Below are positions 33,514 to 54,679 of a stretch of DNA of 64,000 bases, piece after piece. The translations under genes were made by a program, and so were the position numbers. How positions within the stretch are numbered: position 1 is the first letter of the stretch; the number at the start of each line of letters is the position of its first letter. The notes under the pieces were generated by a model. The model was not told where the DNA came from. It did not search any database and worked only from the letters and a program-made list of their open reading frames with translations. The stretch is taken from IMG/VR virus record IMGVR_UViG_3300023179_000009, positions 372,001 through 436,000 of that record. One strand, given 5' to 3'.

Positions 33514-33517
33514 AATT

Positions 33518-34540
33518 ATGGCAAAAATATCAAGTTTAGATGCGGGTTACACCACAGGGATGCTGTCTGTTTTTCCTGAGGCTTTAGATGATTTTGAATC
33601 ACTATACAGGGCCACAAATAATACCAAGATTGCTTTAAAGCAAACTTTGAATTTTAACTCTCCAAGAATTATAGTAGAGGACACAAGTGCTTTTCCTCCA
33701 AATGGAATAGTTAGAGTAGGTCCGGATGTTGGGACTTATGGCGAATATGAAATGATTTTTTATGAATACAAAACGCCTTATACTTTCGAAAAATTAAGTC
33801 GAGGCTTTGCTGGTTCAAGACAAAGAAAATGGTCCACTCAAGGAAATTATGTCACCAACTCTGTCGTGGCCGAACACCACAATGCTATAAAAGACGCTTT
33901 AATTAATATGCAAGTTAATTGTGGTTTGAAAGAATTTCCAGAGCCTGAATCTTTGAATGGAATTTTGAAATATCAAGAAACTAGATTTCTTGCTCCCAAG
34001 CCTTTGTTTCGTGCGTTTCCCATTAAAGGCCCGCCTCCCTTGAAAGTAAGATTTCAAAATTTCTCCACTGGTTGGATCGCACGATATCTTTGGGATTTTG
34101 GCGACGGATCTAATTCGTTAGAGAAAAGCCCTGTTCACGTTTACTTGAACGAGGGTATTTATAATGTAAAACTAAATGTAATAACTTCTAGTGGCGCTCA
34201 AGGCGTTGCTTCAAAAATAGGATACATAGAAGTCAATGCAGACGAGTCCATCCCGTATTTTTATGTTGATTCTATCGATAATCCTTACTCTCAAAAATAC
34301 GCAACAGAGAGGGGTCTGCAACCAAAAGAATTTATTTTTGTGGATCAGTCAGACGGGGATATAGTTCAAAGGAATTGGATTTTTGGAGATGGAACAAATT
34401 TTGCCCAGCAAGACCCGAACATACACGAAGTAAAGCACATTTATGCAAATCCTGGAGAATATGTAGTCACACAGTTAATTCAGTTTGCTAACGGTAGGAT
34501 TAAGCGTGTTGAACTACCGGAAACTTTGATAGTTTTATAA
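33518..34540 (+). CDS. PKD-domain virion/fibre protein 1
   Basis: two PKD domains (YLWDFGDG..SPVHVY...GIYNVKL; WIFGDG..HIYANPGEY); N-terminal AEHHN module. Confidence 0.8.
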   Translation: MAKISSLDAGYTTGMLSVFPEALDDFESLYRATNNTKIALKQTLNFNSPRIIVEDTSAFPPNGIVRVGPDVGTYGEYEMIFYEYKTPYTFEKLSRGFAGSRQRKWSTQGNYVTNSVVAEHHNAIKDALINMQVNCGLKEFPEPESLNGILKYQETRFLAPKPLFRAFPIKGPPPLKVRFQNFSTGWIARYLWDFGDGSNSLEKSPVHVYLNEGIYNVKLNVITSSGAQGVASKIGYIEVNADESIPYFYVDSIDNPYSQKYATERGLQPKEFIFVDQSDGDIVQRNWIFGDGTNFAQQDPNIHEVKHIYANPGEYVVTQLIQFANGRIKRVELPETLIVL

Positions 34541-34552
34541 GAAAAGAGATTT

Positions 34553-38698: not shown

Positions 38699-39556
38699 AT
38701 GTATATTAAAAAACACGATAGTGGAAATGAGTATATCTACGCCGGGGATGTTTGGGTTAGAAATTTTACCAAAAAAAAAGTATCCCCATTACAGATAACT
38801 AGTTTGTTTTCTCAAAGTGACTTTAGAAGTGTAATAGAGAACCAACAATTAAATTTAAATTTTCCCAAAATATCCGATGAAGTGTTGCAATTTGATAAAG
38901 TGGTAATAGTGTCTGATGGTTTTAAATTTGAAGAAAAACAATCTATTTTATCCAATTTACCAAAAGATGTTTGTATTCTTGCAACAAATGGAGCATTGAA
39001 TAAGTGGAAACTATTCAAAAAAGATATTGATGATGATAAAAAAAGATCAATAAACGCTTATGTTGTAAACAATCCTTTCAAAGAATGTTTTAATTATCTA
39101 CCTCCTCAAAATTCAAAATATTACCCTGTGTGTGTTGCCTCTTTAAGAACAAATCATGAGTTTTTAAAAAAATATTTAGGTGACGTTTATACTTATTGTC
39201 CAACTTCCGAAGCTGGATTTGGAATCCATGCTGCTGAGCAGTATTTTATAGATGATTATAGAAATCCAATATGTGCTTGTATAAACTTAGCTTACCAGTT
39301 CGGTGTTAAAAAATTAATGTTGTTTTGTTGTGATGACTCTTTTGAAAAATCAAGAGAACAAGCGATCCAGTTGCCGAATAAACTTTGGACTTATTCTTCG
39401 CTTTTAAGATCTCAAGATATAATTGATGCAAATTTATATTGGTTAAAAAATCAAGAAAATGAAGAAATTCAAATCGTAGACCACTCTAGCGGTGCAGATT
39501 ATAAGTATGCAACATATATACATGAAAAGGATATAACATCCTTTTTCAATGACTAA
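38699..39556 (+). CDS. DUF115/MptE/Maf-like Rossmann-fold protein
   Basis: VVIVSDG, ILATNGAL, ACINLAYQFGVKKLMLFCCD pattern. Confidence 0.5.
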   Translation: MYIKKHDSGNEYIYAGDVWVRNFTKKKVSPLQITSLFSQSDFRSVIENQQLNLNFPKISDEVLQFDKVVIVSDGFKFEEKQSILSNLPKDVCILATNGALNKWKLFKKDIDDDKKRSINAYVVNNPFKECFNYLPPQNSKYYPVCVASLRTNHEFLKKYLGDVYTYCPTSEAGFGIHAAEQYFIDDYRNPICACINLAYQFGVKKLMLFCCDDSFEKSREQAIQLPNKLWTYSSLLRSQDIIDANLYWLKNQENEEIQIVDHSSGADYKYATYIHEKDITSFFND

Positions 39557-39891: not shown

Positions 39892-39928
39892 AAAAATAAA
39901 ATTACTCTTAAAAAATAACAAGCCTAGT

Positions 39929-40300
39929 TTAGAAACTGGGCTTGTTTTGTTTTTTGATCATGGTTCTTAAAGTTTTAAAAGATTTTTTAAAACTTGTATT
40001 AAAATTGTTGTGTTCAAAAGACTCAACCAAAGGATTAAAAACAGCGGGGAGATCTGTGTATCCTCTTCCTCTTAGTCTTGTTTTTAACTCATCAAAATTG
40101 TTGCAAGTTTCAATCCATAAATCATAAAGTATTTTGTTTTCTTGAATAATTTGATTTATTTTTTTTTCCGCAAAAACAGGGAGATTTAAGTCTTTAATAT
40201 CGCTAATTTTTGAAGTAACAATTGACTCACTCAAAATTGTTGTTATGACCTTTATTCCCCTTTTGTTCCTGTTTGCCAAATATAAATAAAGCTTCTTCAT
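39929..40300 (-). CDS. hypothetical protein
   Basis: 123-aa ORF filling the gap. Confidence 0.6.
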   Translation of the reverse strand: MKKLYLYLANRNKRGIKVITTILSESIVTSKISDIKDLNLPVFAEKKINQIIQENKILYDLWIETCNNFDELKTRLRGRGYTDLPAVFNPLVESFEHNNFNTSFKKSFKTLRTMIKKQNKPSF

Positions 40301-40421
40301 TCATTAAACCTTTAAATAAAATTTCTAAAAAAATTTTTGCATGTTCATCTTTTCCCCATAGATCAAAAAAATCTACGAGTTCTCTATTAACATAGTCAAT
40401 TTTTTCTTTATCTTTACTCAT
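40227..40421 (-). CDS. hypothetical small protein
   Basis: 64-aa ORF overlapping the next minus-strand gene. Confidence 0.35.
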   Translation of the reverse strand: MSKDKEKIDYVNRELVDFFDLWGKDEHAKIFLEILFKGLMNEEALFIFGKQEQKGNKGHNNNFE

Positions 40422-40432
40422 TTTTTATAGTT

Positions 40433-41035
40433 ATGATTGGTTTAACTGAATATTCTGCGTTGAAGAACGATATTTGTTTGATTTATAATGGTTGGTGTGA
40501 CGAGTATCTTTTACAATTAGATATTTTAAAGCCATTTATTGAAAAACAAAAAAATATCTCAATATTTATATCATGCCGAAATGATAAAAAAATATTATTT
40601 CCCGACAAGGATTATTTTGTGCCATCATCCGATTTAGGCAATTATAAATTTGGTTTTACTTATGAAATTACTTTTGATGGACAAAATCACCCAATTGACA
40701 ATTTCTTAAAACTATTATCAATTGATAAAATAGAAAACAAAAAAATTGAAAAAGATTCAATTACAAATCTTTGTGTTTTATTAACAAAAGGAAACTATCC
40801 AACAAAAAACTTAAATAGTGACCAAATTAATTTTTTAAATAAAATAGCCAAACAAAAAGGATATGATGTCGTTGTCGATCAAAGTATTTTCAATGCTGGG
40901 TTGGTTATGGGTGTAGAAAGTTTTGATTTATTCAAGGCTGCTAGTCTTGGAATTGAGACTTGCTTATTCGATACAGGGCTGGGTTTGAATCTCTTTAAAA
41001 AAATGTTTCCTTATTTTGAAACAATTAGTTTATAA
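40433..41035 (+). CDS. GT9-like fold protein, possibly degenerate
   Basis: YPTKNL..DQI and AGLVMGVESFDLFKAASLGIET resemble the GT9 C-terminal motif but lack its D..H. Confidence 0.4.
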   Translation: MIGLTEYSALKNDICLIYNGWCDEYLLQLDILKPFIEKQKNISIFISCRNDKKILFPDKDYFVPSSDLGNYKFGFTYEITFDGQNHPIDNFLKLLSIDKIENKKIEKDSITNLCVLLTKGNYPTKNLNSDQINFLNKIAKQKGYDVVVDQSIFNAGLVMGVESFDLFKAASLGIETCLFDTGLGLNLFKKMFPYFETISL

Positions 41036-41067
41036 AATAATATATATTATATCACAAAAGAGGCACC

Positions 41068-41634
41068 ATGTCTGTATTTAAGGTAAAATTAAACAACGGA
41101 ACTCAAGGAAAATTAGATGTAAATCCCGATACAGGGACAGCTTTTGGCGTTTCCAAACAAAGACAAATTTATGTGGCTGGCCCCAATAGAAAAATAAGGA
41201 TATTGAGCGATGGCGATGTCTTCACCGATTGCAACTATTGGAAAAGATTCACAAAAGAGTTCATGGGCGAAGAAAATGCTTTTATAGAGATAGTCAGCGA
41301 TGACGGCTCTGTTTATAGCGAAAATTCAGCGGAAAACACCTACTCGGTTGGGAACACTTTAAGCGTAACAACGTCTTTTTCTGCAACTGCTATTGATTTT
41401 ATGGATCTTTATGGTTCTCCAGCAAGGTTCTTAATGGTTCAAAATATAGATAATTCAACACCCGTAACCGGCGAATTAAATGGAAATTCTGGAGTTACAT
41501 TTATTGTCGGCCCTGGCGAGACAATGATGTTCAATCAGGGTGACGTTGTTATTACTAAATTAAGATTAAAAAGTGACTCAGGAAATCCTAGTGTTACATA
41601 TATCGCATCGGTCAGGAGTGACTGCAAAACTTGA
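41068..41634 (+). CDS. hypothetical protein, possibly virion-associated
   Basis: GAGG RBS; beta-rich 188 aa. Confidence 0.7.
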   Translation: MSVFKVKLNNGTQGKLDVNPDTGTAFGVSKQRQIYVAGPNRKIRILSDGDVFTDCNYWKRFTKEFMGEENAFIEIVSDDGSVYSENSAENTYSVGNTLSVTTSFSATAIDFMDLYGSPARFLMVQNIDNSTPVTGELNGNSGVTFIVGPGETMMFNQGDVVITKLRLKSDSGNPSVTYIASVRSDCKT

Positions 41635-41649
41635 TTTAGAAAGTTTTCA

Positions 41650-42627
41650 ATGGGGATTGTAAAAAAAAATATTAAAAATTTAAGACCAGAGAAGTTTAAG
41701 AAGAAATCTAATTTATTAAATTATTTAGAAAATAGAAATAAAATATTAATAATAAGAAGTGTTGGTGGATTGGGCGACATACTCATGCATCGAATGATGT
41801 TTGAAGATTTTAAAAATTTATCTCAAGATTTAGAAGTTCATTTTTGTTGCCCCAGTTATTATCACGACGCAATAAAAGATCACCCTTTTATTGATAAAAT
41901 TTTGGATTGTCAACAAGTTAACAAAAATGATTATGTAATTCATTATAACACATCAACTGTTTGCGGCAGAACAGAGATGGATAATTTGCCTAATAAATCG
42001 CCTCATAGAAGTGATATTTGGGCAAATTATTGTGGGGTTGAGTTAAAAAATCATGACATGCATATAAACTTGAGCGATTGGGAAAAAAACATTGCTTATG
42101 ATTTGCTAAAGTCAATCAATAAAAAATCAATCAAAAGCGTTGCAATATGCCCAATCTCAGCCATGGTGAACAAAAATTTATTGCCAAATCAAGTTTGTTT
42201 TTTAGTAGATTTCTTGAAAAAACAAAATTTGTTTCCTTTTTGTTTGCATCATAAAATTATAGATTATTGTGAAAAAAATAGAATTCCATCGATAATAGAA
42301 CCAAGAATTAGAATTTGGATGGCTATTTTGCAACAAGTTGATTATGTCATAAGTGTAGACACTGCTGCTTTTCATTGTGCTGGAGGGTTAAAAAAGCCCC
42401 TAACGGGGATTTTTAGTTTCATAGACGGAAAAGTATATGGAAAATATTTTGATTTTGTTCTGCTTCAAAAACACAAAGAAGATGACACAAATTGGACTTG
42501 CGGCCCTTGTTATGATTGGTGCAAGTGCCCAAAAACTTCTCTTAGTCCAAAGCCCTGCATAACAGATATTTCTGAAGAAATGTTAACTGGAGCAGTAAAT
42601 AGGATGCTAGAAAAATGGCCGTTATAA
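41650..42627 (+). CDS. GT9 family (heptosyltransferase-like) glycosyltransferase
   Basis: KILIIRSVGGLGDILM, HPFID, VISVDTAAFHCAGGLKKP, C-terminal CGPC...C...PC. Confidence 0.82.
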   Translation: MGIVKKNIKNLRPEKFKKKSNLLNYLENRNKILIIRSVGGLGDILMHRMMFEDFKNLSQDLEVHFCCPSYYHDAIKDHPFIDKILDCQQVNKNDYVIHYNTSTVCGRTEMDNLPNKSPHRSDIWANYCGVELKNHDMHINLSDWEKNIAYDLLKSINKKSIKSVAICPISAMVNKNLLPNQVCFLVDFLKKQNLFPFCLHHKIIDYCEKNRIPSIIEPRIRIWMAILQQVDYVISVDTAAFHCAGGLKKPLTGIFSFIDGKVYGKYFDFVLLQKHKEDDTNWTCGPCYDWCKCPKTSLSPKPCITDISEEMLTGAVNRMLEKWPL

Positions 42628-42649
42628 ACTATATTAAATAAGGGTTGTT

Positions 42650-42862
42650 ATGCCTCAACTCATAAAACCGAGCACAAAAGTAAAAATTATTCCTAAAGAT
42701 GGAGAGATTGAGATTACTCTTAATATAAACATAAATCTTGATGGAAAAGTTTCTGCTATTGCGGACAATGCTGATGTTTTGGTTGATGAAGAAGAAAAAG
42801 TTCCTCATATTATTCCGGATTTTTCTTCGGGTTTAAAATTAAATTTTGGGAAAAATGCATGA
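42650..42862 (+). CDS. small hypothetical protein
   Basis: 70 aa; preceded by an ACTATATTA box. Confidence 0.6.
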   Translation: MPQLIKPSTKVKIIPKDGEIEITLNININLDGKVSAIADNADVLVDEEEKVPHIIPDFSSGLKLNFGKNA

Positions 42863-43626
42863 TTGGAATTTACGCAATAAAAAATAAATTTAATAACAAA
42901 CTTTATATCGGACAGAGCGTGTCGATTAAATGTAGATGGATGAATCACAGATCAGATTTGGCCACGGGTAGGCATCCAAATAAACATTTGCTAAAATCTT
43001 ATAAGAAATATGGAGAAGATTGTTTTGAATTTTTGATTTTAGAAAATTGTTTAAAAAGAGATTTGGGGAAAAAAGAAGAAGAGTGGATAAAAAAATTTCC
43101 TAAAAAACAACTATACAATATAAACTATAACATTGTAGATTTAAATGGAGAAAAAAATCCTTTTTTTGGTAAAAAGCACAAAAAAGAATCCAAAAAGAAA
43201 ATGTCAATTTGGAAAAAACAAAATTATATAGGTGCTAAAAATCCTAATTTTGGCAAAAAATGGACAAAAGAACAAAAAACCAAAAATGTTTTAAAAAATT
43301 CAAACACCAAATTAAAAAAAACTGATGTTCTGGAAATTAAAAAATTATTAATAGATGGCAAATTAGAAGATAAAGAAATTGCTAAAAAATTTAAAATTGG
43401 AAGATCCGTGGTAACAAGAATTTCTAACGGAACAAGGTGGTCCCATGTAACAGGGGGAAGAGTAATAAAAAAAGAAAGGAGAGGTTTAAGGAACATAGGT
43501 GTTAAGAGGTCAGAGAAAACAAAACAAAAAATCAGAAATTCTATTTTGGGCATCAAAAGATCTGAAGAAACAAAACGCAAAATAAGTTTATCTAAACAAA
43601 AAAAGAAGGAGAAAAAATGTCAATAG
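42859..43626 (+). mobile_element. free-standing GIY-YIG homing endonuclease with NUMOD3 repeats
   Basis: GIYAIKN..YIGQS..RW..H, NPFFGKKH and RSEETKRKIS repeats; overlaps both neighbours. Confidence 0.92.
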
Positions 43627-44630
43627 GAGCGGATGTCGGGACTTACAATCTGGTTTGCTGTAAAAGAAATGACAATGGGGATTTTGTTTACAAACGTGAA
43701 GTGAATGCTTTTTTGTCAATGCCTCTTGATAATGATTTTGTTTTTAACATGATGAAGCAGGCTGGCGTTCCACTTATTCACAGGGAAGACGCAAACATAG
43801 CATACGCTCTTGGCGAAGCAGCCGTTAATATGGCCTACACAATGACTCAATTAGAATTAAAAAGACCAATGAAAGATGGTTGTGTTAATCCGAAAGAACA
43901 AGATGCTTTTCAAATTATGAATATTATGATCCACAATCTTTTGGATGAAATAAAGCACGATAAGGAAGTGCTAGTTTACTGTGTTCCCGCAAATGCTATA
44001 AACGAACAAACTGATGCTGATTATCATCAAAAGATTGTTGAAGCAATATTTAAAGCATACAAGTCAGAGAAAGGTTTTACCGTAGATGCGAGACCAATAA
44101 ATGAAGCAATGGCTCTTGTTTATGCCGAACTAAAGGACAAGATGTTCACTGGAATTGGGGTTTCATGCGGAGCAGGCTTAGTTAATGTTGCATTCAGTCT
44201 TTTTGGTGCTCCTGTTTTCAGTTTTGCTCTCGCCAATTCGGGGGATTGGATAGACAAACAAGCCGCTTTGGCAACAGGCGAGACGATAGCCTTTATTAAT
44301 AAAACAAAAACAAAAATAGACTTAGACAAAGAACCCGCCAATTTAGTGGAACGTGCAATAATCACTCAATATCAATTAATGATTGAAAAAACAGTGGGTG
44401 GTATCAAAAAAGGTCTGGAAAATAATAAAGAAAAAAATGCAAAGTTAGATGCACCTGTTGATTTTGTTCTTGCTGGGGGAACGTCTTCTCCTCCAGGTTT
44501 TGCGAAAATGTTTGAAAAACTTTTAAGACAAACAAAACTTCCGATAGAAATAGGCCGTGTTATTCATCCAAGCGACCCATTATTTAGTGTTGCTCGTGGT
44601 TGCTTGGTGGCCGCTGAAAATATAAAGTAA
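43617..44630 (+). CDS. actin-like ATPase (volactin-like / MreB superfamily)
   Basis: phosphate-1 IGADVGT, RPMKDG, INEAMA, phosphate-2 GVSCGAG, adenosine LAGGTS, connect-2 PLFSVARG. Confidence 0.88.
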   Translation: MSIGADVGTYNLVCCKRNDNGDFVYKREVNAFLSMPLDNDFVFNMMKQAGVPLIHREDANIAYALGEAAVNMAYTMTQLELKRPMKDGCVNPKEQDAFQIMNIMIHNLLDEIKHDKEVLVYCVPANAINEQTDADYHQKIVEAIFKAYKSEKGFTVDARPINEAMALVYAELKDKMFTGIGVSCGAGLVNVAFSLFGAPVFSFALANSGDWIDKQAALATGETIAFINKTKTKIDLDKEPANLVERAIITQYQLMIEKTVGGIKKGLENNKEKNAKLDAPVDFVLAGGTSSPPGFAKMFEKLLRQTKLPIEIGRVIHPSDPLFSVARGCLVAAENIK

Positions 44631-44637
44631 AGGTAAA

Positions 44638-45129
44638 ATGACTGTTCTAAAATTTGTAAATGATTTAGGTGTCGCCGCTTATGTGTTAATGCACGGCTAC
44701 ACTGTTGTTGGCAAAAAAGCAAAATCTATTTATTTTGAGTGTGAAAATATTGAATCATCTAAAGAATTTGATAAATTAGTTTTGGAATATCAACCACCAA
44801 ATGATTTTTACACATTTGACTCTTGTCTCATGTTTTTGAAAAAAATCAACGAAAGTGTTCCAGAGGTTATCGATGATAGAATACATAAGACTGTCGGTGA
44901 TCTTGGTGTGGCGGCTTATTTGTTGATGCATGAATATAGACCTAAAAGTATGGGCTTAAAGGTTATCGGCAAAAAAGGAAAATATGTATATTTCGAACAC
45001 CCCGAGGGTCGTGGCGACGACTTTGAAAGATTGAGCTACCAATATCTGCCTAGTCAATTCCAAGTTTATGATTCTAATTTGATGGCTTTGAAAAAAATTG
45101 GCGAACATATGCCGAAGAATAGACCTTAA
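44638..45129 (+). CDS. protein with two tandem DUF5659-like domains
   Basis: internal duplication of DLGVAAY[VL]LMH...GKK....FE...F..L...Y.P..F..[FY]DS.LM.LKKI. Confidence 0.7.
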   Translation: MTVLKFVNDLGVAAYVLMHGYTVVGKKAKSIYFECENIESSKEFDKLVLEYQPPNDFYTFDSCLMFLKKINESVPEVIDDRIHKTVGDLGVAAYLLMHEYRPKSMGLKVIGKKGKYVYFEHPEGRGDDFERLSYQYLPSQFQVYDSNLMALKKIGEHMPKNRP

Positions 45130-45178
45130 GAAAAGTTTTCTTTCGATATATATATTTAGAAATATCGAAAAGGTGACC

Positions 45179-48100
45179 ATGAAAAGTTTTATAGAGTATA
45201 GAAAAAACAAATTGCTTAAAGGCAATAAATTAAATATTCAAGAATCTATTATTGAATGCTTTGATCTTTTAAAATTAGATCTATTAAAATCTATAAAATT
45301 ACCGGATATCCTCTCTGAGAACACTAGAGTCAAAGCAATCACTGAATCTGCTTATGAAGTTTGTAAAAAAGAAGATTATCAAGACAATAAACAAATAATA
45401 GAATTAATAATTTCCGAATTTAAAAATAATTTTTGGTCACAATTGATATCGGAGGCGACTGCAACCGCTGAAAAAGAACCTAAGGTTACTGTTGATGATT
45501 TAAAAAAACAAATGTCGGATGAAATAGACTCGATGGTTGGCGAATTAAAACAATTAGTTTCTCGCTCATTATCTGCCTCAAGAACAACAACCGGAAATGA
45601 CGTTGAGGATGCAACAACAAGTTCAACCGAACCCGGTGAAGAAAATTCACCAACACCCAAACTTACCGCAAATCAAGCAAAATACATAAGTGATTTGTAT
45701 CAAAAATTAGGAAGAAACCCTCCGTCTGATCTTGATAAACTAAATCCTTTACAAGCCAGTAGGCTTATAGATCAATTAAAAAAACAAATAGGAGCGAGAA
45801 CAGGATCGCCTGCTCCATCTTCGTCTCAATTCAACGCCAATCAAACGACTAGCGGGGATGCTGGTGGTGAAGATTTTTCATTAGACGAACCTACTTCTTC
45901 GCCAGCCAGTTCTTCTCCACTTCCTAGTCAACAGGTTATGAATGGAAGATATGTTTTGCCAAATGATTGGAAAAGCAAATACGGAACAAGATATGGCACT
46001 GAGAGACCGACATATCCTGACGGGTTTAAACCAGCACCATATGGACACATGAGACCGAGCGATGGTTGGCTAGGTGGTTTGAAAAGAACAATTTGGGATC
46101 CTGCTACCGGCTGGCTAAAAAATAAAACCAGGAACTTTAGAAGACGCTGGCACAGAGATGAGTTTAGAGAACATTTTATTAATTTAGAAAATATATTCTT
46201 GGAAAATGCTGTGGAGATCATGAGTGATATTGACACATGGACCACAAGATTGAAAGATATTGTTTTAAATAAATACTTTGATCAAATTAAAAACTTTTTA
46301 AGTGGAGATGTTCAATCTTTGCCAAAAACCAAAGATTCCGTCGCCGGGAAAACTGGCGATGTTAGTCCAAGACAACAATCGCCCGCTGTTGATGCTGGAT
46401 CTGGTAAAGTTGATGACGACGATGTTGAATACGAAGACGATAATAAGGCCGAAGGCCCCACAGGTGATGTTCAACCCAAGAAATCAAATGATGCTTCCGT
46501 CGATTCCAATATTCAAAAAACTGATTTTACAAAGAAGGAAAGCATATCTGAAGGTGCAAATTTATTGAAGCTGACTTATAGGGACGATAAATTTTACACT
46601 TCTAATTCTAATGAAGAATTAGAGGGAAGTGTTTTGAGAAATTTTTTAATCAGGCAACTTTTAAAGATTTTTCAAAAAGATCAAAAATTACAAGATGAAG
46701 TTTGGAAATCAAAAGATCTAAAAGAAAGAGATGAAGCCGAAGCAAGGTTGGATAAAATTATTGCTAGCTCAATCAAAAGACCCACGGATTTTGAACTACA
46801 AATAATAAATGAATGGCTTGGTAAATTTGAATCTATTGCATTAACCGGCTATAGCAATAAAAAAACAAATTTTCCTTTAATTTTGGCATATTTCAAATGG
46901 CATAAAAAAGAAAAGTATGGGTTAGATATTAAAACCAATAAAAGAGAACCTAGAAAAACCGAGGGCGATGACTCTGGTGAGGTTGCAGCAAAAAAACAAG
47001 ATTTAACACCTGAGCAAAAAAAAGATTTGGAAGAATTCAATAGATTTAAAAAAGAATTCCCTAAAGCTTATAAAAAGTTAATTGATAGTTTCGAAGGCGG
47101 AACCGAAGAGGAGCGGATTAAAGATACCGAAGTTTGGGTTTTAGAGGCGGGCTTAGGAGAAGAATCTGAATTAAAACAAATTATTGAATTTCTAAAAAAA
47201 CAATCAGGTGAAGAGTCACAAGAATCAGGTGAAGAGTCACAAGAATCAGGTGAAGAGTCACAAGAATCAGGTGAAGAGTCACAAGAATTAAAAAAAAAAT
47301 CCCTAACTGATGAGGAATTTATTTTTAGTTTGCAAAAAAAATGGTTTGAGAACAATAAGTCAACATTAGATTTAAGAGATGTTTTAACAAACAAATTCAT
47401 TGACAGCGGGAAAGGGCCGCTAACATTAGATGATCTCAAAAATATAGTTAGTGATTTTGATTTGGAAGACAAAGATCAAATTGAAGAAGCTAGGCAAAAA
47501 GTTATGGATGCTGTTAGAAAGCACCCTATAACTTTGGAAAGAAAAAAAGTAAATAGAGATCAATTAAAAAAAACTAAAGACTCAGATGTAGTTGACCCCG
47601 AAACTACGACAATAAAAATAAATTCAAACAAAGAAGAAGAGAACCAGATTAAAGATGAACTGGACGAGAATGAAGTTTATCAAAGAATTTATGAAAAATA
47701 TCAAAATTATCTAATTAGCAAAGGCTCAAAAGGAGATGATTTAAGAAATGGCCTAGATTTGTTTGACGAAAAAATTATACAAGATATTTTATTGAAAGGC
47801 AAAGATAAAATTGAAGACATTCTATCTACGCAAGAAAGTCTTTTAGACAATTTGATTGAAAAAATCAAAAAAGATCCCGTACCCGAAAATTCGGATGTGC
47901 CCGAGGAGTTAGAGTCTTCTTTTGAAAAATTAGAAAGAGACACGCAGTACAAAGATTTGACAAAGCAATATGTTGATTCGTTGAGAGGTCAAGGAAAAGA
48001 TGAAGAAACTATAAAAAAAGAATTGCATAAAAAAACATTAAAACATGCAAAAGAAATGTTTGATCAAGAAAAAACAATAAAACAAATTGTTCAAGATTAT

Positions 48101-48772
48101 GAAAAAGAATTGGGCATAATCCCCGAAGAAAGTCCAGATAAAACTAAATCTTCGCAAAAGTCAGATTCTCAAGAAGAAATCAATAGGATCGCAAGAGATT
48201 CAGGGGAAATTACTCGAACATCTTCGGGAGATAATGAGGGAACAACTAAATTAGGTGAAGAAAAAAATATAGAAAAAACTATAAAAGACATAACAAAACA
48301 TGTTAAGTTGCAGGGCGGCAGTTTGTCTCTAAGAGATGGGAAACTTTTAATTAAAAACAGAGATAAATTAGATAAAAAAACTCAAAATTTAATTAAAAAA
48401 CACAGGGAAGAAATAATAGATTTTTTAACCCCAAAAGAAACAAGATCTCAGAAGACATCGCCAGAAGAAGCAATTGAAAAAAAAGTTAAGCCCGATGATA
48501 AAAAACTTGAAGAAATCCCTGAGAGATTAAAAAATATAGATGGATACGATTCATTGAGACAAGAAATAATAAAAATAATTGAGGGCAGCAATAATCAAGT
48601 GATGCGTAATATTTTAATGAGAAAAGAGTCAGAGTGGCTGGATTCAGATTTGGATGACAATCAAATAATAAAAAATTTAAGAGAATTAAAAAATCGTTTT
48701 GAGTCTCAAACAAGAAAAACTGAGGGTTTTTTGGGGATATTAAAAAGATTTAAAGAGTTAGTTAATTCATAA
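45179..48772 (+). CDS. large K/E-rich hypothetical protein, putative internal head protein
   Basis: ~1197 aa from MKSFIEY with an AAGGTG RBS; low complexity and helical. Confidence 0.75.
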   Translation: MKSFIEYRKNKLLKGNKLNIQESIIECFDLLKLDLLKSIKLPDILSENTRVKAITESAYEVCKKEDYQDNKQIIELIISEFKNNFWSQLISEATATAEKEPKVTVDDLKKQMSDEIDSMVGELKQLVSRSLSASRTTTGNDVEDATTSSTEPGEENSPTPKLTANQAKYISDLYQKLGRNPPSDLDKLNPLQASRLIDQLKKQIGARTGSPAPSSSQFNANQTTSGDAGGEDFSLDEPTSSPASSSPLPSQQVMNGRYVLPNDWKSKYGTRYGTERPTYPDGFKPAPYGHMRPSDGWLGGLKRTIWDPATGWLKNKTRNFRRRWHRDEFREHFINLENIFLENAVEIMSDIDTWTTRLKDIVLNKYFDQIKNFLSGDVQSLPKTKDSVAGKTGDVSPRQQSPAVDAGSGKVDDDDVEYEDDNKAEGPTGDVQPKKSNDASVDSNIQKTDFTKKESISEGANLLKLTYRDDKFYTSNSNEELEGSVLRNFLIRQLLKIFQKDQKLQDEVWKSKDLKERDEAEARLDKIIASSIKRPTDFELQIINEWLGKFESIALTGYSNKKTNFPLILAYFKWHKKEKYGLDIKTNKREPRKTEGDDSGEVAAKKQDLTPEQKKDLEEFNRFKKEFPKAYKKLIDSFEGGTEEERIKDTEVWVLEAGLGEESELKQIIEFLKKQSGEESQESGEESQESGEESQESGEESQELKKKSLTDEEFIFSLQKKWFENNKSTLDLRDVLTNKFIDSGKGPLTLDDLKNIVSDFDLEDKDQIEEARQKVMDAVRKHPITLERKKVNRDQLKKTKDSDVVDPETTTIKINSNKEEENQIKDELDENEVYQRIYEKYQNYLISKGSKGDDLRNGLDLFDEKIIQDILLKGKDKIEDILSTQESLLDNLIEKIKKDPVPENSDVPEELESSFEKLERDTQYKDLTKQYVDSLRGQGKDEETIKKELHKKTLKHAKEMFDQEKTIKQIVQDYEKELGIIPEESPDKTKSSQKSDSQEEINRIARDSGEITRTSSGDNEGTTKLGEEKNIEKTIKDITKHVKLQGGSLSLRDGKLLIKNRDKLDKKTQNLIKKHREEIIDFLTPKETRSQKTSPEEAIEKKVKPDDKKLEEIPERLKNIDGYDSLRQEIIKIIEGSNNQVMRNILMRKESEWLDSDLDDNQIIKNLRELKNRFESQTRKTEGFLGILKRFKELVNS
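47202..47288 (+). repeat. 21-bp tandem repeat, 4 copies (SGEESQE)
   Basis: AATCAGGTGAAGAGTCACAAG repeated four times in frame. Confidence 0.95.
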
Positions 48773-49255
48773 TTATTTTTTAAATATCTGATCCTGTGCT
48801 TCGAATGTTCTTCTAGATTGTTCAGCTAAACTTTCTAAACTTGCTATATCAACAAAAGAAGCATCTCCTTGCTGATCCTGCTCTGCTTCTTTTTTTTCAA
48901 TAATAGGAAGAGTTTCTTGTTGGGGTTTGTTTTTTACTTTTGCTTTTATATCGCTTTCTAACTTCTCTCCAGTTCTTTCTTCATATTCTTTTATCATTAA
49001 AGCGTGTTCGGGATTGCTTGAATCTAATTCAACTTCTTCATGAATTGAAATTATATGTTGCGTTGTGAAAAAACTCACAAGGTCATCGTTGTATGGGTGT
49101 GTTCCCCAAATTCCATCAGAATTTATAGTTTGAACTCTAATGACGAAGTGTTCACGAGAAATAGTTTCATCAAAACTTCTATTCATAGATGTGGTCACAA
49201 CACTACACACTTTTCCAACAAAATATTGAAGTTCTTTGATTGTGTTTGAAGTCAT
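48773..49255 (-). CDS. hypothetical protein
   Basis: 160-aa ORF convergent with the preceding gene. Confidence 0.7.
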   Translation of the reverse strand: MTSNTIKELQYFVGKVCSVVTTSMNRSFDETISREHFVIRVQTINSDGIWGTHPYNDDLVSFFTTQHIISIHEEVELDSSNPEHALMIKEYEERTGEKLESDIKAKVKNKPQQETLPIIEKKEAEQDQQGDASFVDIASLESLAEQSRRTFEAQDQIFKK

Positions 49256-49287
49256 AATTTTTTAAATAATAATGGTAAATAAATTAT

Positions 49288-49611
49288 ATGCCATCAAAAA
49301 GCAAAAGTCAACAAAGATTGTTTGGAATAATTCATTCTTGTCAAAAGAATGAAAAGAAAAAGATATGCTCAGAGCCTAGTATTAAAAAAATTATACAAAA
49401 TATTAGTAAAAAAGACGCAAAAGATTTTGCCAGCACAAAACATGAAGATTTGCCCGAGAGGTTGGAGAGTTTTAAAAATTGGCTTGAAAGCCAAAAAGGA
49501 GAAAAAATGGAAGAAAACAAATGTATGTGCGATTGCCCACCTTGCAAAAGTGGCGATTGCTCAAGCTGCACCTGCAAAAATTGTAAATGTGAAAACTGCA
49601 CTTGCAACTAA
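49288..49611 (+). CDS. DUF3008-like protein with C-terminal metallothionein-like segment
   Basis: MPSKSKSQQRLFG...KDFASTKHEDLPER N-domain; the last 34 aa contain 11 Cys. Confidence 0.7.
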   Translation: MPSKSKSQQRLFGIIHSCQKNEKKKICSEPSIKKIIQNISKKDAKDFASTKHEDLPERLESFKNWLESQKGEKMEENKCMCDCPPCKSGDCSSCTCKNCKCENCTCN

Positions 49612-50669
49612 ATTTTATTTGCCAAAAGTATAGGGCGAGTGTCTTTTGTAAACAATTTAATGTATTTGTTTACGTAAGATACTAGTGTTTCTAAATTTTT
49701 ATTTACTAAAAGACCATTCCAATCTTTGTAGATTTTAGGTGGTCTAACGAAGTATATTTCTTTAAATCCTTTTGAAAGCAAATTTTCGCCAATATTAAGC
49801 ATTGCCTCCAAGCCAGCCTCATCTGAGTCGAATGCTAAAACCGGCACAAAGTCTTTAATTAAATCTATTTGTGTTTCTGATAAGAATTTACCGCCACAAG
49901 CACAAGCATTTAATCCTGCTTGTTTAATTGTGAGTGCATCAAACTCTCCCTCCATTATAAACAATTTTTCTCCTAAACAATTCCAATTAGTCATAAATAA
50001 AACATTTTTTTGATCCACTACAGAGGTGGGGCATTTCATATATCGAAGTGTATTCCTCCGATCTGTTATGGATCTTGCGTTGTAATAAATTAAATTACTA
50101 GATTTATCATAATATGGAATAACTATTCTATTTTTGTATTCGCCCGAAACACAAACATATAAACCTTCACAATTTATTTTTCTGGCAGTTAGGTATTGTT
50201 CGGCTTTTTTCTTCATAAAATGATGAGGGTATTCCGCCGAGATCAAATAGGAATGGGGCGGCAACTGGAGATCGACTTTTTTTTCTTTGTCTTCGTGTCT
50301 GACAATATTGTTGCTTTGATTAAAGAAATCATGAACTTTTTCTTCGAGATCACGAAGAGAAGAACCCTCAGATATTCTGTATTCGGCTTCTTCCCAGTCA
50401 ACTTTATCTAGTTCTGAAACCAAGCCAACCAAGGATCCCATTTGGTCCGTCAACCAACATCTATATGATCCGAATTCAGGATGTTTAGACTTTCCCCCGC
50501 TTGGATTCATCCATAAGTGAAATTTGTTGTCTGTTTTGCCGAGTTTATCCTCTGACCAAGGAGAATTAGTACATATTTCTGTTCCGTGTGCTGTGTTTCT
50601 AAGTTTTATGTTATGCTCTCCAAACTTTTGTTTAGACCATTCATAAAACAAATCAAAATCAACTGACAT
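49608..50669 (-). CDS. DNA primase (zinc-binding domain + TOPRIM)
   Basis: YLTARKI, NRIVIPYYD, YNARSI, MEGEFDALT, AFDSDEAG, KDWN. Confidence 0.88.
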   Translation of the reverse strand: MSVDFDLFYEWSKQKFGEHNIKLRNTAHGTEICTNSPWSEDKLGKTDNKFHLWMNPSGGKSKHPEFGSYRCWLTDQMGSLVGLVSELDKVDWEEAEYRISEGSSLRDLEEKVHDFFNQSNNIVRHEDKEKKVDLQLPPHSYLISAEYPHHFMKKKAEQYLTARKINCEGLYVCVSGEYKNRIVIPYYDKSSNLIYYNARSITDRRNTLRYMKCPTSVVDQKNVLFMTNWNCLGEKLFIMEGEFDALTIKQAGLNACACGGKFLSETQIDLIKDFVPVLAFDSDEAGLEAMLNIGENLLSKGFKEIYFVRPPKIYKDWNGLLVNKNLETLVSYVNKYIKLFTKDTRPILLANKI

Positions 50670-50685
50670 TTTGTTTTCCTCGCTG

Positions 50686-50714
50686 TTGATTTATATCAGA
50701 ATTTTTAGGATAAT
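50686..50714 (+). promoter_or_regulatory. putative sigma70-type promoter
   Basis: TTGATT-17 nt-GATAAT upstream of the nuclease gene. Confidence 0.4.
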
Positions 50715-50734
50715 TCAACTTTGAGGAAATTTTT

Positions 50735-51571
50735 ATGGATATAAATCACCTGTCAGTTAGTAGAAAAAAGACATTCGATCAGTGTTCGCAGTTATACAAA
50801 TTCAAATATCATCTCAAAACACCTTCGCCGCAACCAGAGCCTTTTTACTTTGTGTATGGAAATTTGGTTCACAAAATAGCGGAGTTGTATGTTGCCGAAA
50901 AGGGGTCTAAAGCAATAGACAAAATAGCCTTAGATGTGCTGCATGGAAAAATCGAATTAAAAGAGGGCAAAAAATGTCCCAAATTGCCAAAAGAATATCA
51001 AAATAAAATAGGCAAAGACATAAAGGCAATTAAAAATTTAACAAAAAAAATAGGATTTGATGGTTATGTTGAATATGATTTTACTTACGATTTGGACCCG
51101 CCAAACAAAAAAAATGTTATAGGTTTTATAGACCGATTGATAATAAAGGAAGATTCAAAACAAAAAAAAGCTTTTATAATTGATTATAAGACAACCAAAA
51201 AAGGAAAACATCGACTTAACAACGAAACTGTTTTATATGACTTACAACTTAGATGTTACTGTAGAGTGGTTCAAAAAATATTTGACATACCAGCGTCGAA
51301 TATAAAGGCGGCACTTTTTTATTTAGATGGAGAAAATTTGATCGCTGCCCAATACAACCAAGACTCACTAGATAGGGTTGAAAAAGAATTAAAAAATGGA
51401 TATGTGACTATTGAAGAAACAAAATCAGAAACAGTTCGTGGTAGTGTTGGGTGGCACTGCAAAAACTGTGAGTATTCGAGCATTTGTCAATTTTATAAAT
51501 CCCAAAATCAATCAAATGAATCTTGGAATGGGGATTTGTTGGAATTGGGACACGATAATTCTTGGAATTAA
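50735..51571 (+). CDS. PD-(D/E)XK exonuclease (Cas4/RecB/AddB-like) with 4-Cys Fe-S staple
   Basis: LSVS...FDQC, GNLVH, GFIDRL, IIDYKT, QLRCY, CKNCEYSSIC. Confidence 0.88.
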   Translation: MDINHLSVSRKKTFDQCSQLYKFKYHLKTPSPQPEPFYFVYGNLVHKIAELYVAEKGSKAIDKIALDVLHGKIELKEGKKCPKLPKEYQNKIGKDIKAIKNLTKKIGFDGYVEYDFTYDLDPPNKKNVIGFIDRLIIKEDSKQKKAFIIDYKTTKKGKHRLNNETVLYDLQLRCYCRVVQKIFDIPASNIKAALFYLDGENLIAAQYNQDSLDRVEKELKNGYVTIEETKSETVRGSVGWHCKNCEYSSICQFYKSQNQSNESWNGDLLELGHDNSWN

Positions 51572-54364: not shown

Positions 54365-54679
54365 TTAAAAATAAATTTTATGTCTTAAAAAACAATCTTT
54401 TTTAAGATTGTTTTTGTTGATGGGACATATCTTTTTCTCAACAACTTGCACTTGTTTTCCAAATTGATCTTGTTTAAAAGTAACTATTGTTTGCAATTTA
54501 CCATATTTTTTTTGCCACAAATCTAAAGGAGAATCACCTAAGGCCAAAGATGGACTATTGCAGTTTGATTTTTGCTGGCAACAGCCGCAACCGCTATTGT
54601 TCTCGGGCTTTTTTCTTCTTTGATATTCTAGGGAAGATTTGCCGGGACTATAGTCAAAACAAGACATTTTTAACCTCAA
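54365..54679 (-). CDS. small basic Cys-containing hypothetical protein
   Basis: 104 aa, CGCCQQKSNC; coupled to the protease gene. Confidence 0.55.
   Translation of the reverse strand: MRLKMSCFDYSPGKSSLEYQRRKKPENNSGCGCCQQKSNCNSPSLALGDSPLDLWQKKYGKLQTIVTFKQDQFGKQVQVVEKKICPINKNNLKKDCFLRHKIYF

What the first reader, a model, noticed from the sequence alone, without database searches (positions are those of the whole stretch)
42650..45129. Phage-encoded volactin-like actin with putative partner genes: a candidate phage cytoskeletal module
Seen: 43617..44630 has every actin-fold motif but a non-canonical phosphate-2 (GIGVSCGAG rather than DxGxG), plus YHQK, PINEAMALVYAEL, GDWIDKQAA.ATG, GGTSSP.GF and PLFSVARG.LVAA. 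From recollection these blocks match the haloarchaeal cell-shape actin volactin rather than MreB, ParM or FtsA; this needs confirming. The gene is flanked by a 70-aa ORF behind a late-type box and by a tandem two-domain DUF5659-like protein. Established: the characterised jumbo-phage filament is tubulin-like PhuZ. Inference: an actin-based system for positioning phage DNA or capsids, or for reshaping the host cell, with the neighbours as adaptors. This is my top candidate for a new system.
Basis: partly seen in the sequence, partly recalled or inferred. Interest (0 to 1): 0.82.

Follow-up and report, generated by a model that had tools for sequence, protein, structure and literature searches.

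The report
Volactin-family actin module in huge phage
A 459-kb uncultivated lake phage encodes an actin-like filament protein of the same family as the archaeal cell-shape actin volactin, always next to two small phage-specific partner genes, which suggests that a whole clade of huge phages has an actin-based cytoskeleton where other jumbo phages use tubulin.

Summary
ORF 43617..44630 (337 aa) matches Pfam Volactin end to end (233.7 bits, cut-off 35). Its model superposes on Haloferax volactin (TM 0.90, 32% identity), well above MreB, MamK, salactin and actin (TM 0.62-0.72). The odd phosphate-2 loop (Ser where MreB has Asp) is shared with archaeal volactins.

Three corrections:
- A mobile GIY-YIG homing endonuclease (42859..43626) lies between the 70-aa ORF and the actin.
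- The 163-aa neighbour resembles DUF5659 in fold only; the Pfam HMM does not match.
- The "late box" is conserved in relatives but is not shown to be a late promoter.

The trio (small protein, actin, DUF5659-like protein) is kept in 26 IMG/VR loci and LR756511, down to 53% actin identity, on contigs up to 693 kb. It is absent beside archaeal volactins. On a tree the phage actins form their own clade, separate from the archaeal one. Some relatives carry an intein exactly in the ATP loop. The genome has no tubulin.

Best reading: an ATP-driven filament with two adaptors that positions phage DNA or the replication and packaging machinery. That function is inferred, not shown. I found no paper describing it. 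Novelty: new variant of a known kind. Interest 0.7.

The parts
42629..42640 (+). Conserved A/T-rich box CTATATTAAATA, 9 nt upstream of the small ORF; a possible promoter element whose class is not established
   Evidence: Read directly. Similar CTATAT(T)AA or CTCTATATAA elements sit at the same place in many relatives. The exact box is not enriched in the window or the genome.
42650..42862 (+). Small acidic protein (70 aa, pI 4.9). It has an N-terminal beta-rich block (DGEIEITLNINI), an acidic linker and a conserved C-terminal IPDFxSGxKLxFGK motif. Proposed filament-binding adaptor or regulator
   Evidence: Conserved directly upstream of the actin (or of the inserted endonuclease) in all clade members, including those at 53-58% actin identity. 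dN/dS is about 0.14. There are 420 homologs, none with a Pfam domain, on the same huge contigs as the actin. No known relatives.
42859..43626 (+). Free-standing GIY-YIG/NUMOD3 homing endonuclease; a mobile insert, not part of the module
   Evidence: Pfam GIY-YIG and NUMOD3, PHROG homing endonuclease. It is absent or degraded in most related loci. A 95-99% identical contig in run X25 joins 42855 to 43632 without it.
43617..44630 (+). Volactin-family actin-fold ATPase (337 aa), the presumed filament former
   Evidence: Pfam Volactin 233.7 bits over the full length. Model pLDDT 94.7. Top structural hit is H. volcanii volactin, TM 0.90. The best PDB hits are MamK, MreB, actin and BeeR filaments. 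A strong Shine-Dalgarno sequence (GAAGGAG) precedes the ATG.
44151..44177 (+). Phosphate-2 loop GIGVSCGAG (residues 179-187). Ser183 stands where MreB has the catalytic-site Asp. The S183/C184 junction (44165/44166) is an intein homing site that is empty here
   Evidence: Ser183 and Gly185 are invariant in 37 family representatives. Archaeal volactins share the loop and it aligns to the E. coli MreB DIGGG loop. Relatives L022-L027, P0121 and P0086 carry LAGLIDADG or mini-inteins exactly here.
44638..45129 (+). Tandem two-domain partner protein (163 aa). Repeat 1 (44638..44877) is acidic, pI 4.7; repeat 2 (44878..45126) is basic, pI 9.5. Each repeat has a beta-alpha-beta-beta-alpha-alpha DUF5659-like fold. 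Proposed pseudo-dimeric cargo adaptor
   Evidence: Model pLDDT 93.6. Repeats aligned. Fold match to a DUF5659 cluster, TM 0.70. The Pfam HMM does not match. It is conserved downstream of the actin in all clade members, and occurs as single-domain 76-84-aa forms in L021 and LR756511. pI values. These are the only copies of the domain in the genome.
45179..48772 (+). Large acidic low-complexity protein (about 1197 aa from the first ATG; the ORF is open from 45098). It is a frequent but not universal downstream neighbour, and its membership of the module is uncertain
   Evidence: The N-terminal ~160 aa are conserved after the partner gene in the closer relatives only. Net charge -30. Only weak Pfam hits.
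40433..42627 (+). Three conserved upstream genes: 40433..41035, 41068..41634 and 41650..42627. The last is weakly like glycosyltransferase family 9. They are co-directional and tightly spaced with the module
   Evidence: Synteny holds in nearly all related loci. Weak Glyco_transf_9 hit. No terminator-like site lies between 40433 and 48772 on the + strand, apart from weak ones inside the large ORF.
48773..51571 (.). Conserved downstream neighbours: 48773..49255 (-), a Toprim/DnaG-like primase at 49608..50669 (-) and a PD-(D/E)XK nuclease at 50735..51571 (+)
   Evidence: Pfam hits. In the 53-68% identity relatives these genes directly follow the actin-partner pair.

Best explanation
Shown: 43617..44630 encodes a volactin-family actin-fold ATPase. 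It is carried by a 459-kb freshwater phage and by a whole clade of huge phages. It is always accompanied by a small acidic protein upstream and a DUF5659-fold protein downstream, which is tandem here and single-domain in some relatives.

Inferred mechanism: the actin binds ATP through the family's Asp6/Gly8/Thr9, Glu163, Ser183-x-Gly-x-Gly and Gly287-Gly-Thr motifs and polymerises into dynamic filaments, as volactin does in Haloferax. The small protein docks on the filament through its conserved C-terminal FG motif, much as ParR or RodZ tails dock on their actins. The DUF5659-like protein acts as a dimer-like adaptor between the filament and a cargo.

The cargo I consider most likely is replicating phage DNA or the replication and packaging machinery. 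The module would then position or spread phage genomes or assembly sites inside the cell, as PhuZ tubulin does for phiKZ-like phages and AlpC/AlpA does for prophage CGP3. This genome has no tubulin.
For: Family and fold:
- Pfam Volactin 233.7 bits.
- TM 0.90 to H. volcanii volactin.
- The top PDB matches are all filament formers: MamK, MreB, actin and BeeR.
- The nucleotide-binding motifs are invariant across 37 representatives, and the Ser-type phosphate-2 loop is shared with authentic archaeal volactins.
- Volactin forms dynamic, ParM-like filaments in vivo (PMC10869688, read).

The ATP site matters:
- Inteins sit exactly in the phosphate-2 loop in several relatives.
- dN/dS is about 0.08.

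The three genes form a module:
- Trio synteny holds in 26 IMG/VR loci and in LR756511, down to 53% actin identity.
- The three families co-occur on the same 60-690-kb contigs.
- More distant viral relatives (40-46% identity) still have a small ORF directly upstream that ends in a K/R-x-FG motif.

The cargo may be DNA:
- The order actin, then small adaptor, is that of parM-parR (established knowledge).
- Other Volactin-family members are fused to ParB-HTH or HU DNA-binding domains.
- A primase and a PD-(D/E)XK nuclease are conserved next to the pair.
- A paralog of the TerL ATPase domain lies between actin and partner in four relatives.
- No tubulin is found in the 91%-complete genome.
Against: - Nothing here shows polymerisation or any physical contact among the three proteins.
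- No iteron or centromere-like repeats lie near the module or stand out elsewhere in the genome.
- The DUF5659-like fold has no solved relative and no known DNA-binding role. Its first repeat is acidic.
- The upstream conserved block looks glycan-related rather than DNA-related, and glycosyltransferases recur beside distant viral homologs.
- Ser in place of the phosphate-2 Asp could change ATPase kinetics.
- RNA evidence is one low-depth contig from a metatranscriptome library that may contain DNA.
Confidence: 0.45

Rival explanations
1. Host-cell or envelope remodelling. The phage actin acts as an MreB- or volactin-like scaffold that changes host cell shape or size, or that organises the neighbouring glycosyltransferase-like enzymes (envelope or virion glycan synthesis), so that very large virions can be built.
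For: - Volactin's known role is in cell shape (PMC10869688).
- The conserved upstream genes include a GT9-like protein at 41650..42627 and an MptE/Maf-like protein at 38699..39556.
- Distant viral homologs sit among GT1, GT2, GT9 and GT10-like genes, a sulfotransferase, WavE and an NTP-transferase gene.
- One distant small upstream protein has an N-terminal transmembrane-looking helix, which would tether filaments to the membrane.
Against: - No homologs of RodZ, MreC or MreD were noticed in the window's Pfam scans.
- The window's own small protein has no transmembrane segment.
- The Pfam glycosyltransferase hits are below their cut-offs.
- The phage actin is not in the archaeal cell-shape clade.
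Confidence: 0.22
2. Capsid or virion-assembly logistics. Treadmilling filaments carry procapsids or tails to assembly or packaging sites, with the partners as capsid adaptors; DNA is not the direct cargo.
For: - The module lies inside a largely structural region: baseplate wedge at 25144..26700, PKD-domain proteins at 33449..36841 and TerL at 59317..61143.
- A T4-late-like A/T box lies upstream, and TATAAATA is enriched upstream of genes in the genome, 11 seen against 1.8 expected.
- PhuZ does this in phiKZ-like phages (PMC9067925, listed; otherwise established knowledge).
Against: Expression timing is unknown. The partners show no similarity to structural proteins. The primase and nuclease neighbours and the DNA-binding fusions in the family point to DNA instead.
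Confidence: 0.15
3. True plasmid-type partition (ParMRC-like). The huge phage persists as an episome or in pseudolysogeny, and the actin and adaptor segregate genome copies at host division.
For: The order actin, then small adaptor, resembles parM-parR. Volactin dynamics resemble those of ParM. ParB-HTH fusions occur in the family.
Against: - No ParM/StbA signature: no ParM-family hit, and none, although that search's control did not ring.
- No centromere-like repeat array.
- The adaptor is not a ribbon-helix-helix or helix-turn-helix protein.
- No close relative was found in 185,579 prokaryote genomes, so there is no sign of resident episomes in sequenced isolates or MAGs.
Confidence: 0.1
4. 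A non-polymerising ASKHA ATPase (chaperone, kinase, or PilM/EutJ-like regulator) that only looks like an actin.
For: The phosphate-2 Asp is replaced by Ser. EutJ and viral Hsp70-like proteins appear among weaker structural hits.
Against: The nearest characterised relative, by a wide margin, is a proven filament former with the same Ser loop (PMC10869688). The top PDB hits are filament proteins. There is no substrate-binding or lid domain: the protein is 337 aa with a compact four-subdomain actin core.
Confidence: 0.05

Closest known systems
Volactin (VolA, HVO_2015) of Haloferax volcanii, Pfam PF25216
   Same: Same Pfam family over its full length and the same fold (TM 0.90, rmsd 2.2 A, 31-36% identity). 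The signature blocks are shared, including the Ser-x-Gly-x-Gly phosphate-2 loop, RRPM, YHxK, PINE, GDWID and GGTS.
   Different: It is not an ortholog: the phage proteins form their own well-supported clade, apart from the archaeal volactin clade. It lacks the acidic C-terminal tail of the archaeal proteins. It is carried by a bacterial-type tailed phage with Shine-Dalgarno-led genes. It has two dedicated neighbours that are absent within 4 kb of 80 archaeal volactin genes.
AlpC/AlpA of Corynebacterium glutamicum prophage CGP3 (PMC4446434)
   Same: A phage-borne actin-like protein, reported to work with a small adaptor and to be needed for efficient viral DNA replication. This is the closest functional precedent for the mechanism proposed here.
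   Different: AlpC is, from my own knowledge, a different and very divergent actin branch; no sequence comparison was made here. It comes from a small temperate prophage, and its adaptor is unrelated to the DUF5659-like or 70-aa proteins as far as can be told.
ParMRC / Alp7ARC type II plasmid partition
   Same: An actin gene is followed by a small adaptor gene. Dynamic instability is reported for volactin as it is for ParM.
   Different: No ParM/StbA family match, no centromere repeats, and the adaptor fold is not ribbon-helix-helix or helix-turn-helix.
PhuZ tubulin spindle of phiKZ-like jumbo phages
   Same: A phage-encoded cytoskeletal NTPase in a very large phage, with a proposed role in positioning DNA and capsids.
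   Different: Tubulin fold, not actin fold. This genome has no tubulin homolog. PhuZ works with a phage nucleus, which was not looked for here.
MreB / MamK
   Same: The best solved structural matches (TM 0.62-0.74), and a partial MreB_Mbl Pfam hit.
   Different: Only 15-19% identity in the structural alignments and 24% in the MAFFT alignment to E. coli MreB. The MreB HMM covers 72 residues. The phosphate-2 Asp is replaced by Ser. On the tree MreB is a long outgroup branch.
DUF5659 (PF18903), for the 163-aa partner
   Same: Each repeat has the same small beta-alpha-beta-beta-alpha-alpha fold (TM 0.70 by the hit) and similar language-model features. DUF5659 clusters are also mostly viral.
   Different: The Pfam HMM does not match even at E<=10. 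The function of DUF5659 is unknown, and no paper in the library mentions it.

Membership tests
Volactin family (Pfam PF25216) | Full-length match to the family HMM above the gathering score | tested here: met
   233.7 bits against a cut-off of 35, profile 1-321 of 321, E 4.8e-69. Same result on the genome.
Volactin family (Pfam PF25216) | Fold closest to the founding member, H. volcanii volactin | tested here: met
   D4GU28 is the top hit: E 7.8e-37, TM 0.90/0.88, rmsd 2.2 A, 32% identity. The next hits have TM 0.71 or less.
Volactin family (Pfam PF25216) | Family signature motifs, including Ser-x-Gly-x-Gly in place of Asp-x-Gly-x-Gly at phosphate 2 | tested here: met
   Alignment with Halorubrum, Haloarcula, Methanosarcina, Archaeoglobaceae and Thermoplasmatales volactins and with E. 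coli MreB. Ser183 and Gly185 are invariant in 37 representatives.
Volactin proper (orthologs of haloarchaeal VolA) | Falls inside the archaeal volactin clade | tested here: not met
   Archaeal volactins form one clade (SH-aLRT 100). The phage trio clade (99) sits elsewhere, inside a 20-row clade of viral-looking representatives (99). This was a quick tree with a single long outgroup.
Volactin proper (orthologs of haloarchaeal VolA) | Forms dynamic cytoplasmic filaments and affects the rod-to-disk shape transition | not testable with these tools
   Needs expression, microscopy and biochemistry.
ParMRC-type partition system | ParM/StbA-family actin | tested here: not met
   No ParM-family hit in the Pfam scan. 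StbA_N was not found in the genome, but that search's control rang nowhere, so it is weak evidence.
ParMRC-type partition system | Centromere of direct repeats next to the operon | tested here: not met
   Intergenic gaps are 7-22 nt. There are no iteron families in 40300..45300, and no non-coding repeat array stands out in the genome.
ParMRC-type partition system | Small DNA-binding adaptor (ribbon-helix-helix or helix-turn-helix) encoded after the actin | tested here: inconclusive
   The gene order fits. The adaptor fold is DUF5659-like, with no solved relative (best Z 5.2), and DNA binding is unknown.
MreB | Full-length MreB_Mbl match and an Asp-type phosphate-2 loop | tested here: not met
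   28.3 bits over residues 57-128 only. Ser replaces Asp. Identity is 15-19% in structural alignments.
DUF5659 (PF18903), 163-aa partner | Match to the family HMM | tested here: not met
   No hit at E<=10 for either repeat, for the single-domain homolog, or in a six-frame search of the genome.
DUF5659 (PF18903), 163-aa partner | Shared fold | tested here: met
   TM 0.70 by the hit, rmsd 2.0 A, 66 residues, to an Atlas cluster that is 92% DUF5659. 77 of the 100 nearest feature hits fall in the DUF5659 set.
Intein (in relatives, at the site that is empty here) | In-frame insert that starts with Cys, ends with His-Asn, is followed by a Cys at +1, and has Hint and splicing domains | tested here: met
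   In L022 a 371-aa in-frame insert lies between GIGVS and CGAG; it begins with Cys and ends with His-Asn, and the C-extein starts with Cys. P0121 has Hint_2, Intein_splicing and LAGLIDADG_3; P0086 has a mini-intein.

The most novel reading that the evidence does not exclude
A large, globally distributed clade of uncultivated huge phages (about 450-700 kb, in lakes and seawater) has its own three-part actin cytoskeleton: a volactin-family filament, a tail-docking small protein and a DUF5659-fold adaptor. It evolved apart from ParM/Alp, MreB and archaeal volactin. It would do for these phages what the PhuZ tubulin spindle does for phiKZ-like phages, organising genome replication, packaging or virion assembly in space. 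It would also give DUF5659-fold proteins their first function, as actin-cargo adaptors.
Probability: 0.4. Interest if true: 0.85.

Novelty: new variant of a known kind. Interest (0 to 1): 0.7.

Why it matters
The only well-studied cytoskeleton of large lytic phages is the tubulin PhuZ. Actin-like proteins are known from one prophage (AlpC) and from plasmid-like elements. Here an actin of the recently named volactin family turns out to be a conserved gene of huge environmental phages, with more than a thousand homologs and contigs up to 693 kb, and with two dedicated, otherwise unknown partner proteins.

If it polymerises and moves cargo, three things follow:
- Subcellular organisation by a virus-encoded cytoskeleton would have arisen at least twice in large phages, from different filament families.
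- There would be candidate volactin-binding factors, which the volactin authors say are still unknown.
- The DUF5659 fold would have a testable function.

All three proteins are small and can be expressed without cultivating the phage, so the question is directly testable.

Tried and rejected
- PHROGs gave no hit for the actin, the 70-aa protein, the 163-aa protein or the upstream genes.
- A sequence search of the PDB found nothing significant for the actin.
- Foldseek against PDB and AFDB clusters, and VIA-align wide, gave only noise for the two-domain partner model.
- The Atlas feature search gave nothing for the 70-aa protein.
- BFVD holds no close viral structural relative of the actin.
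- The DUF5659 HMM found nothing.
- Profile searches with the partner and the small protein returned only orthologs with no annotation in the listed top 120, so they could not link the partner to DUF5659 by sequence.
The scan with the window's own actin found no relative in 185,579 genomes, so it gave no host clue.
- Centromere-like repeats were sought and not found.
- The sigma-70 promoter scan was no better than shuffles.
- The idea that TATATTAAATA is a genome-wide late box was rejected: 11 matches against 5.5 expected in the window, and few upstream of genes.
- Synonymous sites are saturated for most pairs, so dN/dS rests on few pairs and failed for the 163-aa gene.
- Metatranscriptome evidence is a single low-depth contig from a relative in an RNA library that may hold DNA. 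The other laid pieces are 19-40-nt chance matches.
- Literature searches found no mention of volactin-like or other actin homologs in huge or jumbo phage papers and reviews, and nothing on DUF5659. The library is incomplete, so this does not prove absence.
- I considered whether the intervening gene in relatives was simply the phage's TerL moved next to the actin. I rejected that because only the ATPase half is similar and the C-terminal half is a different domain.
Full report
**Setting.** The window is bases 372001-436000 of a 458,813-bp IMG/VR virus record that CheckV rates 91% complete. GC content is about 33-35%. The window holds phage hallmark genes: a baseplate wedge protein at 25144..26700, a large terminase at 59317..61143 and PKD-domain proteins. 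Near-identical DNA occurs in lake and other freshwater metagenomes, and more distant copies occur in seawater metagenomes.

**Check of the observation.**
- Pfam's Volactin model matches end to end (E 4.8e-69, 233.7 bits, cut-off 35). MreB_Mbl matches only 72 residues at 28 bits.
- An AlphaFold model built on 37 family representatives is confident (pLDDT 94.7, pTM 0.92).
- Among reviewed UniProt models its best match by far is Haloferax volcanii volactin (E 7.8e-37, TM 0.90/0.88, rmsd 2.2 A, 32% identity). Salactin, MreB, Mbl, the MamK-like protein and eukaryotic actins follow at TM 0.62-0.71 and 14-19% identity.
- Among solved structures the best matches are MamK, MreB, actin and BeeR, which are all filament formers. 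The non-polymerising EutJ ranks lower.
- No solved structure is similar at the sequence level.

**The phosphate-2 loop.**
- A phmmer alignment to MreB and a multiple alignment with authentic archaeal volactins and E. coli MreB both place Ser183 of GIGVSCGAG opposite the Asp of MreB's DIGGG loop.
- The archaeal volactins fetched from Halorubrum, Haloarcula, Methanosarcina, Archaeoglobaceae and Thermoplasmatales genomes have the same G-I/V-S-x-G-A-G loop.
- Ser183 and Gly185 are invariant in 37 family representatives, as are Asp6 and Gly8 (phosphate 1) and Gly287-Gly288 (adenosine motif). Thr9, Glu163 and Thr289 are nearly invariant.

The 'non-canonical' loop is therefore a signature of the family, which includes a protein shown to form dynamic filaments in vivo (PMC10869688). 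It is not a sign of decay.

**Corrections to the anatomy.**
1. The actin's immediate 5' neighbour in this window is a 255-aa GIY-YIG/NUMOD3 homing endonuclease at 42859..43626. It is absent from most related loci, where the small ORF abuts the actin, and it is degraded in one. A contig from run X25 that is 95-99% identical joins 42855 to 43632 through 28 other bases containing a Shine-Dalgarno sequence, so an endonuclease-free allele exists in nature.
2. The 163-aa protein is a tandem of two ~80-aa repeats. Its model is confident (pLDDT 93.6), and each repeat folds as beta-alpha-beta-beta-alpha-alpha. The Pfam DUF5659 HMM does not match it at any threshold tried. However, a shape search of the ESM Atlas aligns residues 1-72 to a cluster that is 92% DUF5659 (TM 0.70 by the hit, rmsd 2.0 A), and 77 of the 100 nearest clusters by language-model features fall in the DUF5659 set. 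'DUF5659-like' is thus true of the fold, not of the sequence family.
3. The box CTATATTAAATA (42629..42640) is present. A similar element lies 8-12 nt before the small ORF's start in many diverged relatives, which suggests function. The exact box is not enriched in the genome. What is enriched upstream of genes is the T4-type TATAAATA, with 11 seen against 1.8 expected. Its class and timing remain unknown.

**Is the neighbourhood conserved?** Yes.
- A scan of IMG/VR found 26 loci with relatives of the actin at 53-99% identity.
- tblastn and HMM searches show one order throughout: three upstream genes (40433, 41068 and 41650 in window coordinates), the small protein, optional mobile inserts, the actin, optional inserts, then the DUF5659-like protein.
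- The small protein is recognisable even beside the 53-58% identical actins. It keeps an N-terminal block like DGEIEITLNINI, an acidic linker and a C-terminal IPDFxSGxKLxFGK motif.
- Its dN/dS of about 0.14 shows that it is a real gene.
- In L021 and in GenBank record LR756511 the partner is a single 76-84-aa domain, so the tandem form here is a fused pseudo-dimer.
- The two repeats have diverged in charge: pI 4.7 and 9.5.
- The three families have hundreds to about a thousand homologs each (1077, 1068 and 420 at E<=0.001). They appear on contigs of the same lengths (for example 148,274; 63,638; 60,259; 51,450), and some of these contigs exceed 600 kb.
- The closer relatives also share the large acidic protein at 45179..48772. 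The more distant ones instead run straight into a small gene, a Toprim primase and a PD-(D/E)XK nuclease, which lie at 48773..51571 in the window.
- No terminator-like site splits the co-directional block 40433..48772, whereas a strong one lies at 39917..39946.

**How far does the module reach?**
- It is absent beside the 34%-identical actin of the 485-kb phage LR745208.
- It is absent beside cellular family members in L028-L030.
- It is absent within 4 kb of all 80 archaeal volactin genes fetched.
- Viral-looking contigs with actins at 40-46% identity lack the DUF5659-like gene. They still have a small ORF immediately upstream that ends in a K/R-x-FG motif, and one of these ORFs has an N-terminal hydrophobic helix.

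The C-terminal FG tail is thus the most persistent feature of the upstream partner. For that reason I propose it as the actin-docking element, by analogy with the ParR and RodZ tails. This is inference only.

**Family structure.**
- An exhaustive HMMER search of 1.84 billion cluster representatives gives 929 representatives at E<=0.001 and 244 at E<=1e-30.
- On a quick maximum-likelihood tree of 115 sequences rooted on E. coli MreB, the trio-bearing phage actins form one clade (SH-aLRT 99) inside a 20-row clade of viral-looking representatives (99). The archaeal volactins form a separate clade (100).
- The protein is therefore a member of the Volactin family as Pfam defines it, but not an ortholog of haloarchaeal VolA.
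- Elsewhere in the family the actin domain is fused to ParB-type HTH domains, to an HU domain, to a zinc ribbon or to a receiver domain. The first two link family members to DNA.

**Mobile elements mark the gene.**
- Six related loci, plus representatives P0121 and P0086, carry an in-frame insert between Ser183 and Cys184.
- In L022 the insert starts with Cys, ends with His-Asn, is followed by Cys, and has Hint, intein-splicing and LAGLIDADG domains. P0086 has a mini-intein.
- From established knowledge, inteins typically sit in the most conserved sites of important proteins, which fits an ATP site under strong constraint.

**Mechanism.** Polymerisation, partner binding and cargo are not shown. 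I commit to a DNA- or factory-positioning role for these reasons:
- The nearest characterised relative forms dynamic, ParM-like filaments.
- The order actin, then small adaptor, recalls type II partition and AlpC/AlpA.
- The family has DNA-binding fusions.
- The primase and nuclease are conserved next to the pair.
- In four relatives a paralog of the terminase ATPase domain, fused to an unknown domain, lies between the actin and its partner.
- The genome has no tubulin to do this job.

Against this reading: there are no centromere-like repeats. The adaptor fold has no solved relative (best Z 5.2). Glycosyltransferase-like genes recur around the viral actins, and this keeps an envelope or shape-remodelling role alive as the main rival.

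**Novelty.**
- JGI's automatic annotation already calls some homologs 'actin-like ATPase involved in cell morphogenesis'.
- The GenBank huge-phage records that carry the gene are unannotated.
- BFVD has no close viral structural relative.
- I found no paper that mentions volactin-like or any other actin homolog in huge or jumbo phages. This includes the 2020 huge-phage survey, a 2021 comparative-genomics study, and 2020 and 2026 reviews.
- Phage cytoskeletons as such are known: PhuZ, and AlpC/AlpA (PMC4446434).

I therefore rate this a new variant of a known kind: a known filament family in a new carrier, with a new and conserved partner set.

Noticed in passing
window 42859..43626: A free-standing GIY-YIG/NUMOD3 homing endonuclease is wedged between the small ORF and the actin, and its stop overlaps the actin's start. 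It is present, absent or degraded among close relatives. A 95-99% identical contig in an RNA-seq library lacks it.
   Followed up: yes
L022:6550-7662 (also L023-L027, P0121, P0086); empty site at window 44165/44166: Inteins (with a LAGLIDADG domain, or mini) are inserted exactly between Ser183 and Cys184 of the actin's phosphate-2 loop in several relatives. The window carries the intein-free allele with the +1 Cys.
   Followed up: yes
L004:7550-9235, L012:5536-7356, L007 about 7720-9220, L023 about 7080-8550; L005:7078-7755, L032:7083-7772: In some relatives a gene lies between the actin and the DUF5659-like gene. It encodes a paralog of the TerL N-terminal ATPase domain (30-53% identical to the window's TerL ATPase half) fused to an unknown C-terminal domain. 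Other relatives keep only that C-terminal domain. The window has neither, with a 7-nt gap instead.
   Followed up: partly
P0173, P0193, P0164, P0208, P0264; L028:6001-8770: Cellular members of the Volactin family are fused to ParB-HTH, HU, zinc-ribbon or response-regulator receiver domains. One MAG from a halophile, probably a bacterium because GGDEF/EAL genes are nearby, has two Volactin paralogs in tandem.
   Followed up: partly
window 38699..39556 and 40433..42627; L116, L118: Glycan-related genes recur beside viral volactin-like actins: an MptE/Maf-like protein and a GT9-like protein here; GT1, GT2, GT9 and GT10-like genes, a sulfotransferase, WavE and an NTP-transferase in distant relatives. 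Most hits are below the Pfam cut-offs.
   Followed up: partly
L014:4690-5196 and proteins P0366, P0380, P0381, P0390: The roughly 150-170-aa versions of the partner protein in one subclade score above threshold for Pfam LidA_Long_CC (PF18641, E 1.1e-07). This is an unexpected match for a beta/alpha repeat protein and is probably an artefact of that model.
   Followed up: no
G000 whole genome: The T4-type late promoter consensus TATAAATA is enriched within 45 nt upstream of predicted gene starts (11 seen, 1.8 expected). This suggests T4-like late transcription in this phage.
   Followed up: partly
window 11750..19867: A 2705-aa ORF spans a stretch where GC rises from about 33% to 50% (14-16 kb). 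It was not analysed and may be a repeat-rich structural or fibre protein.
   Followed up: no
window 47202..47288 (G000 419202..419288): A perfect 21-nt repeat, 4.1 copies, encodes SGEESQE repeats inside the large acidic protein downstream of the module.
   Followed up: no
window 39917..39946: A strong 13-bp-stem terminator-like hairpin with T runs lies between convergent genes, marking the upstream boundary of the gene block that contains the actin module.
   Followed up: no
window 43600..43616 and homologous sites: The actin gene is preceded by a strong Shine-Dalgarno sequence (GAAGGAG or AAGGAGG) in all relatives examined, whereas the small ORF has none. Use of Shine-Dalgarno sequences argues against a host from lineages that rarely use them, but no host could be assigned.
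   Followed up: no
window 6772..8262, 54676..56121, 58131..59267: The window also encodes a tRNA nucleotidyltransferase-like protein, a fungalysin (M36)-like metallopeptidase and an M28 peptidase.
   Followed up: no
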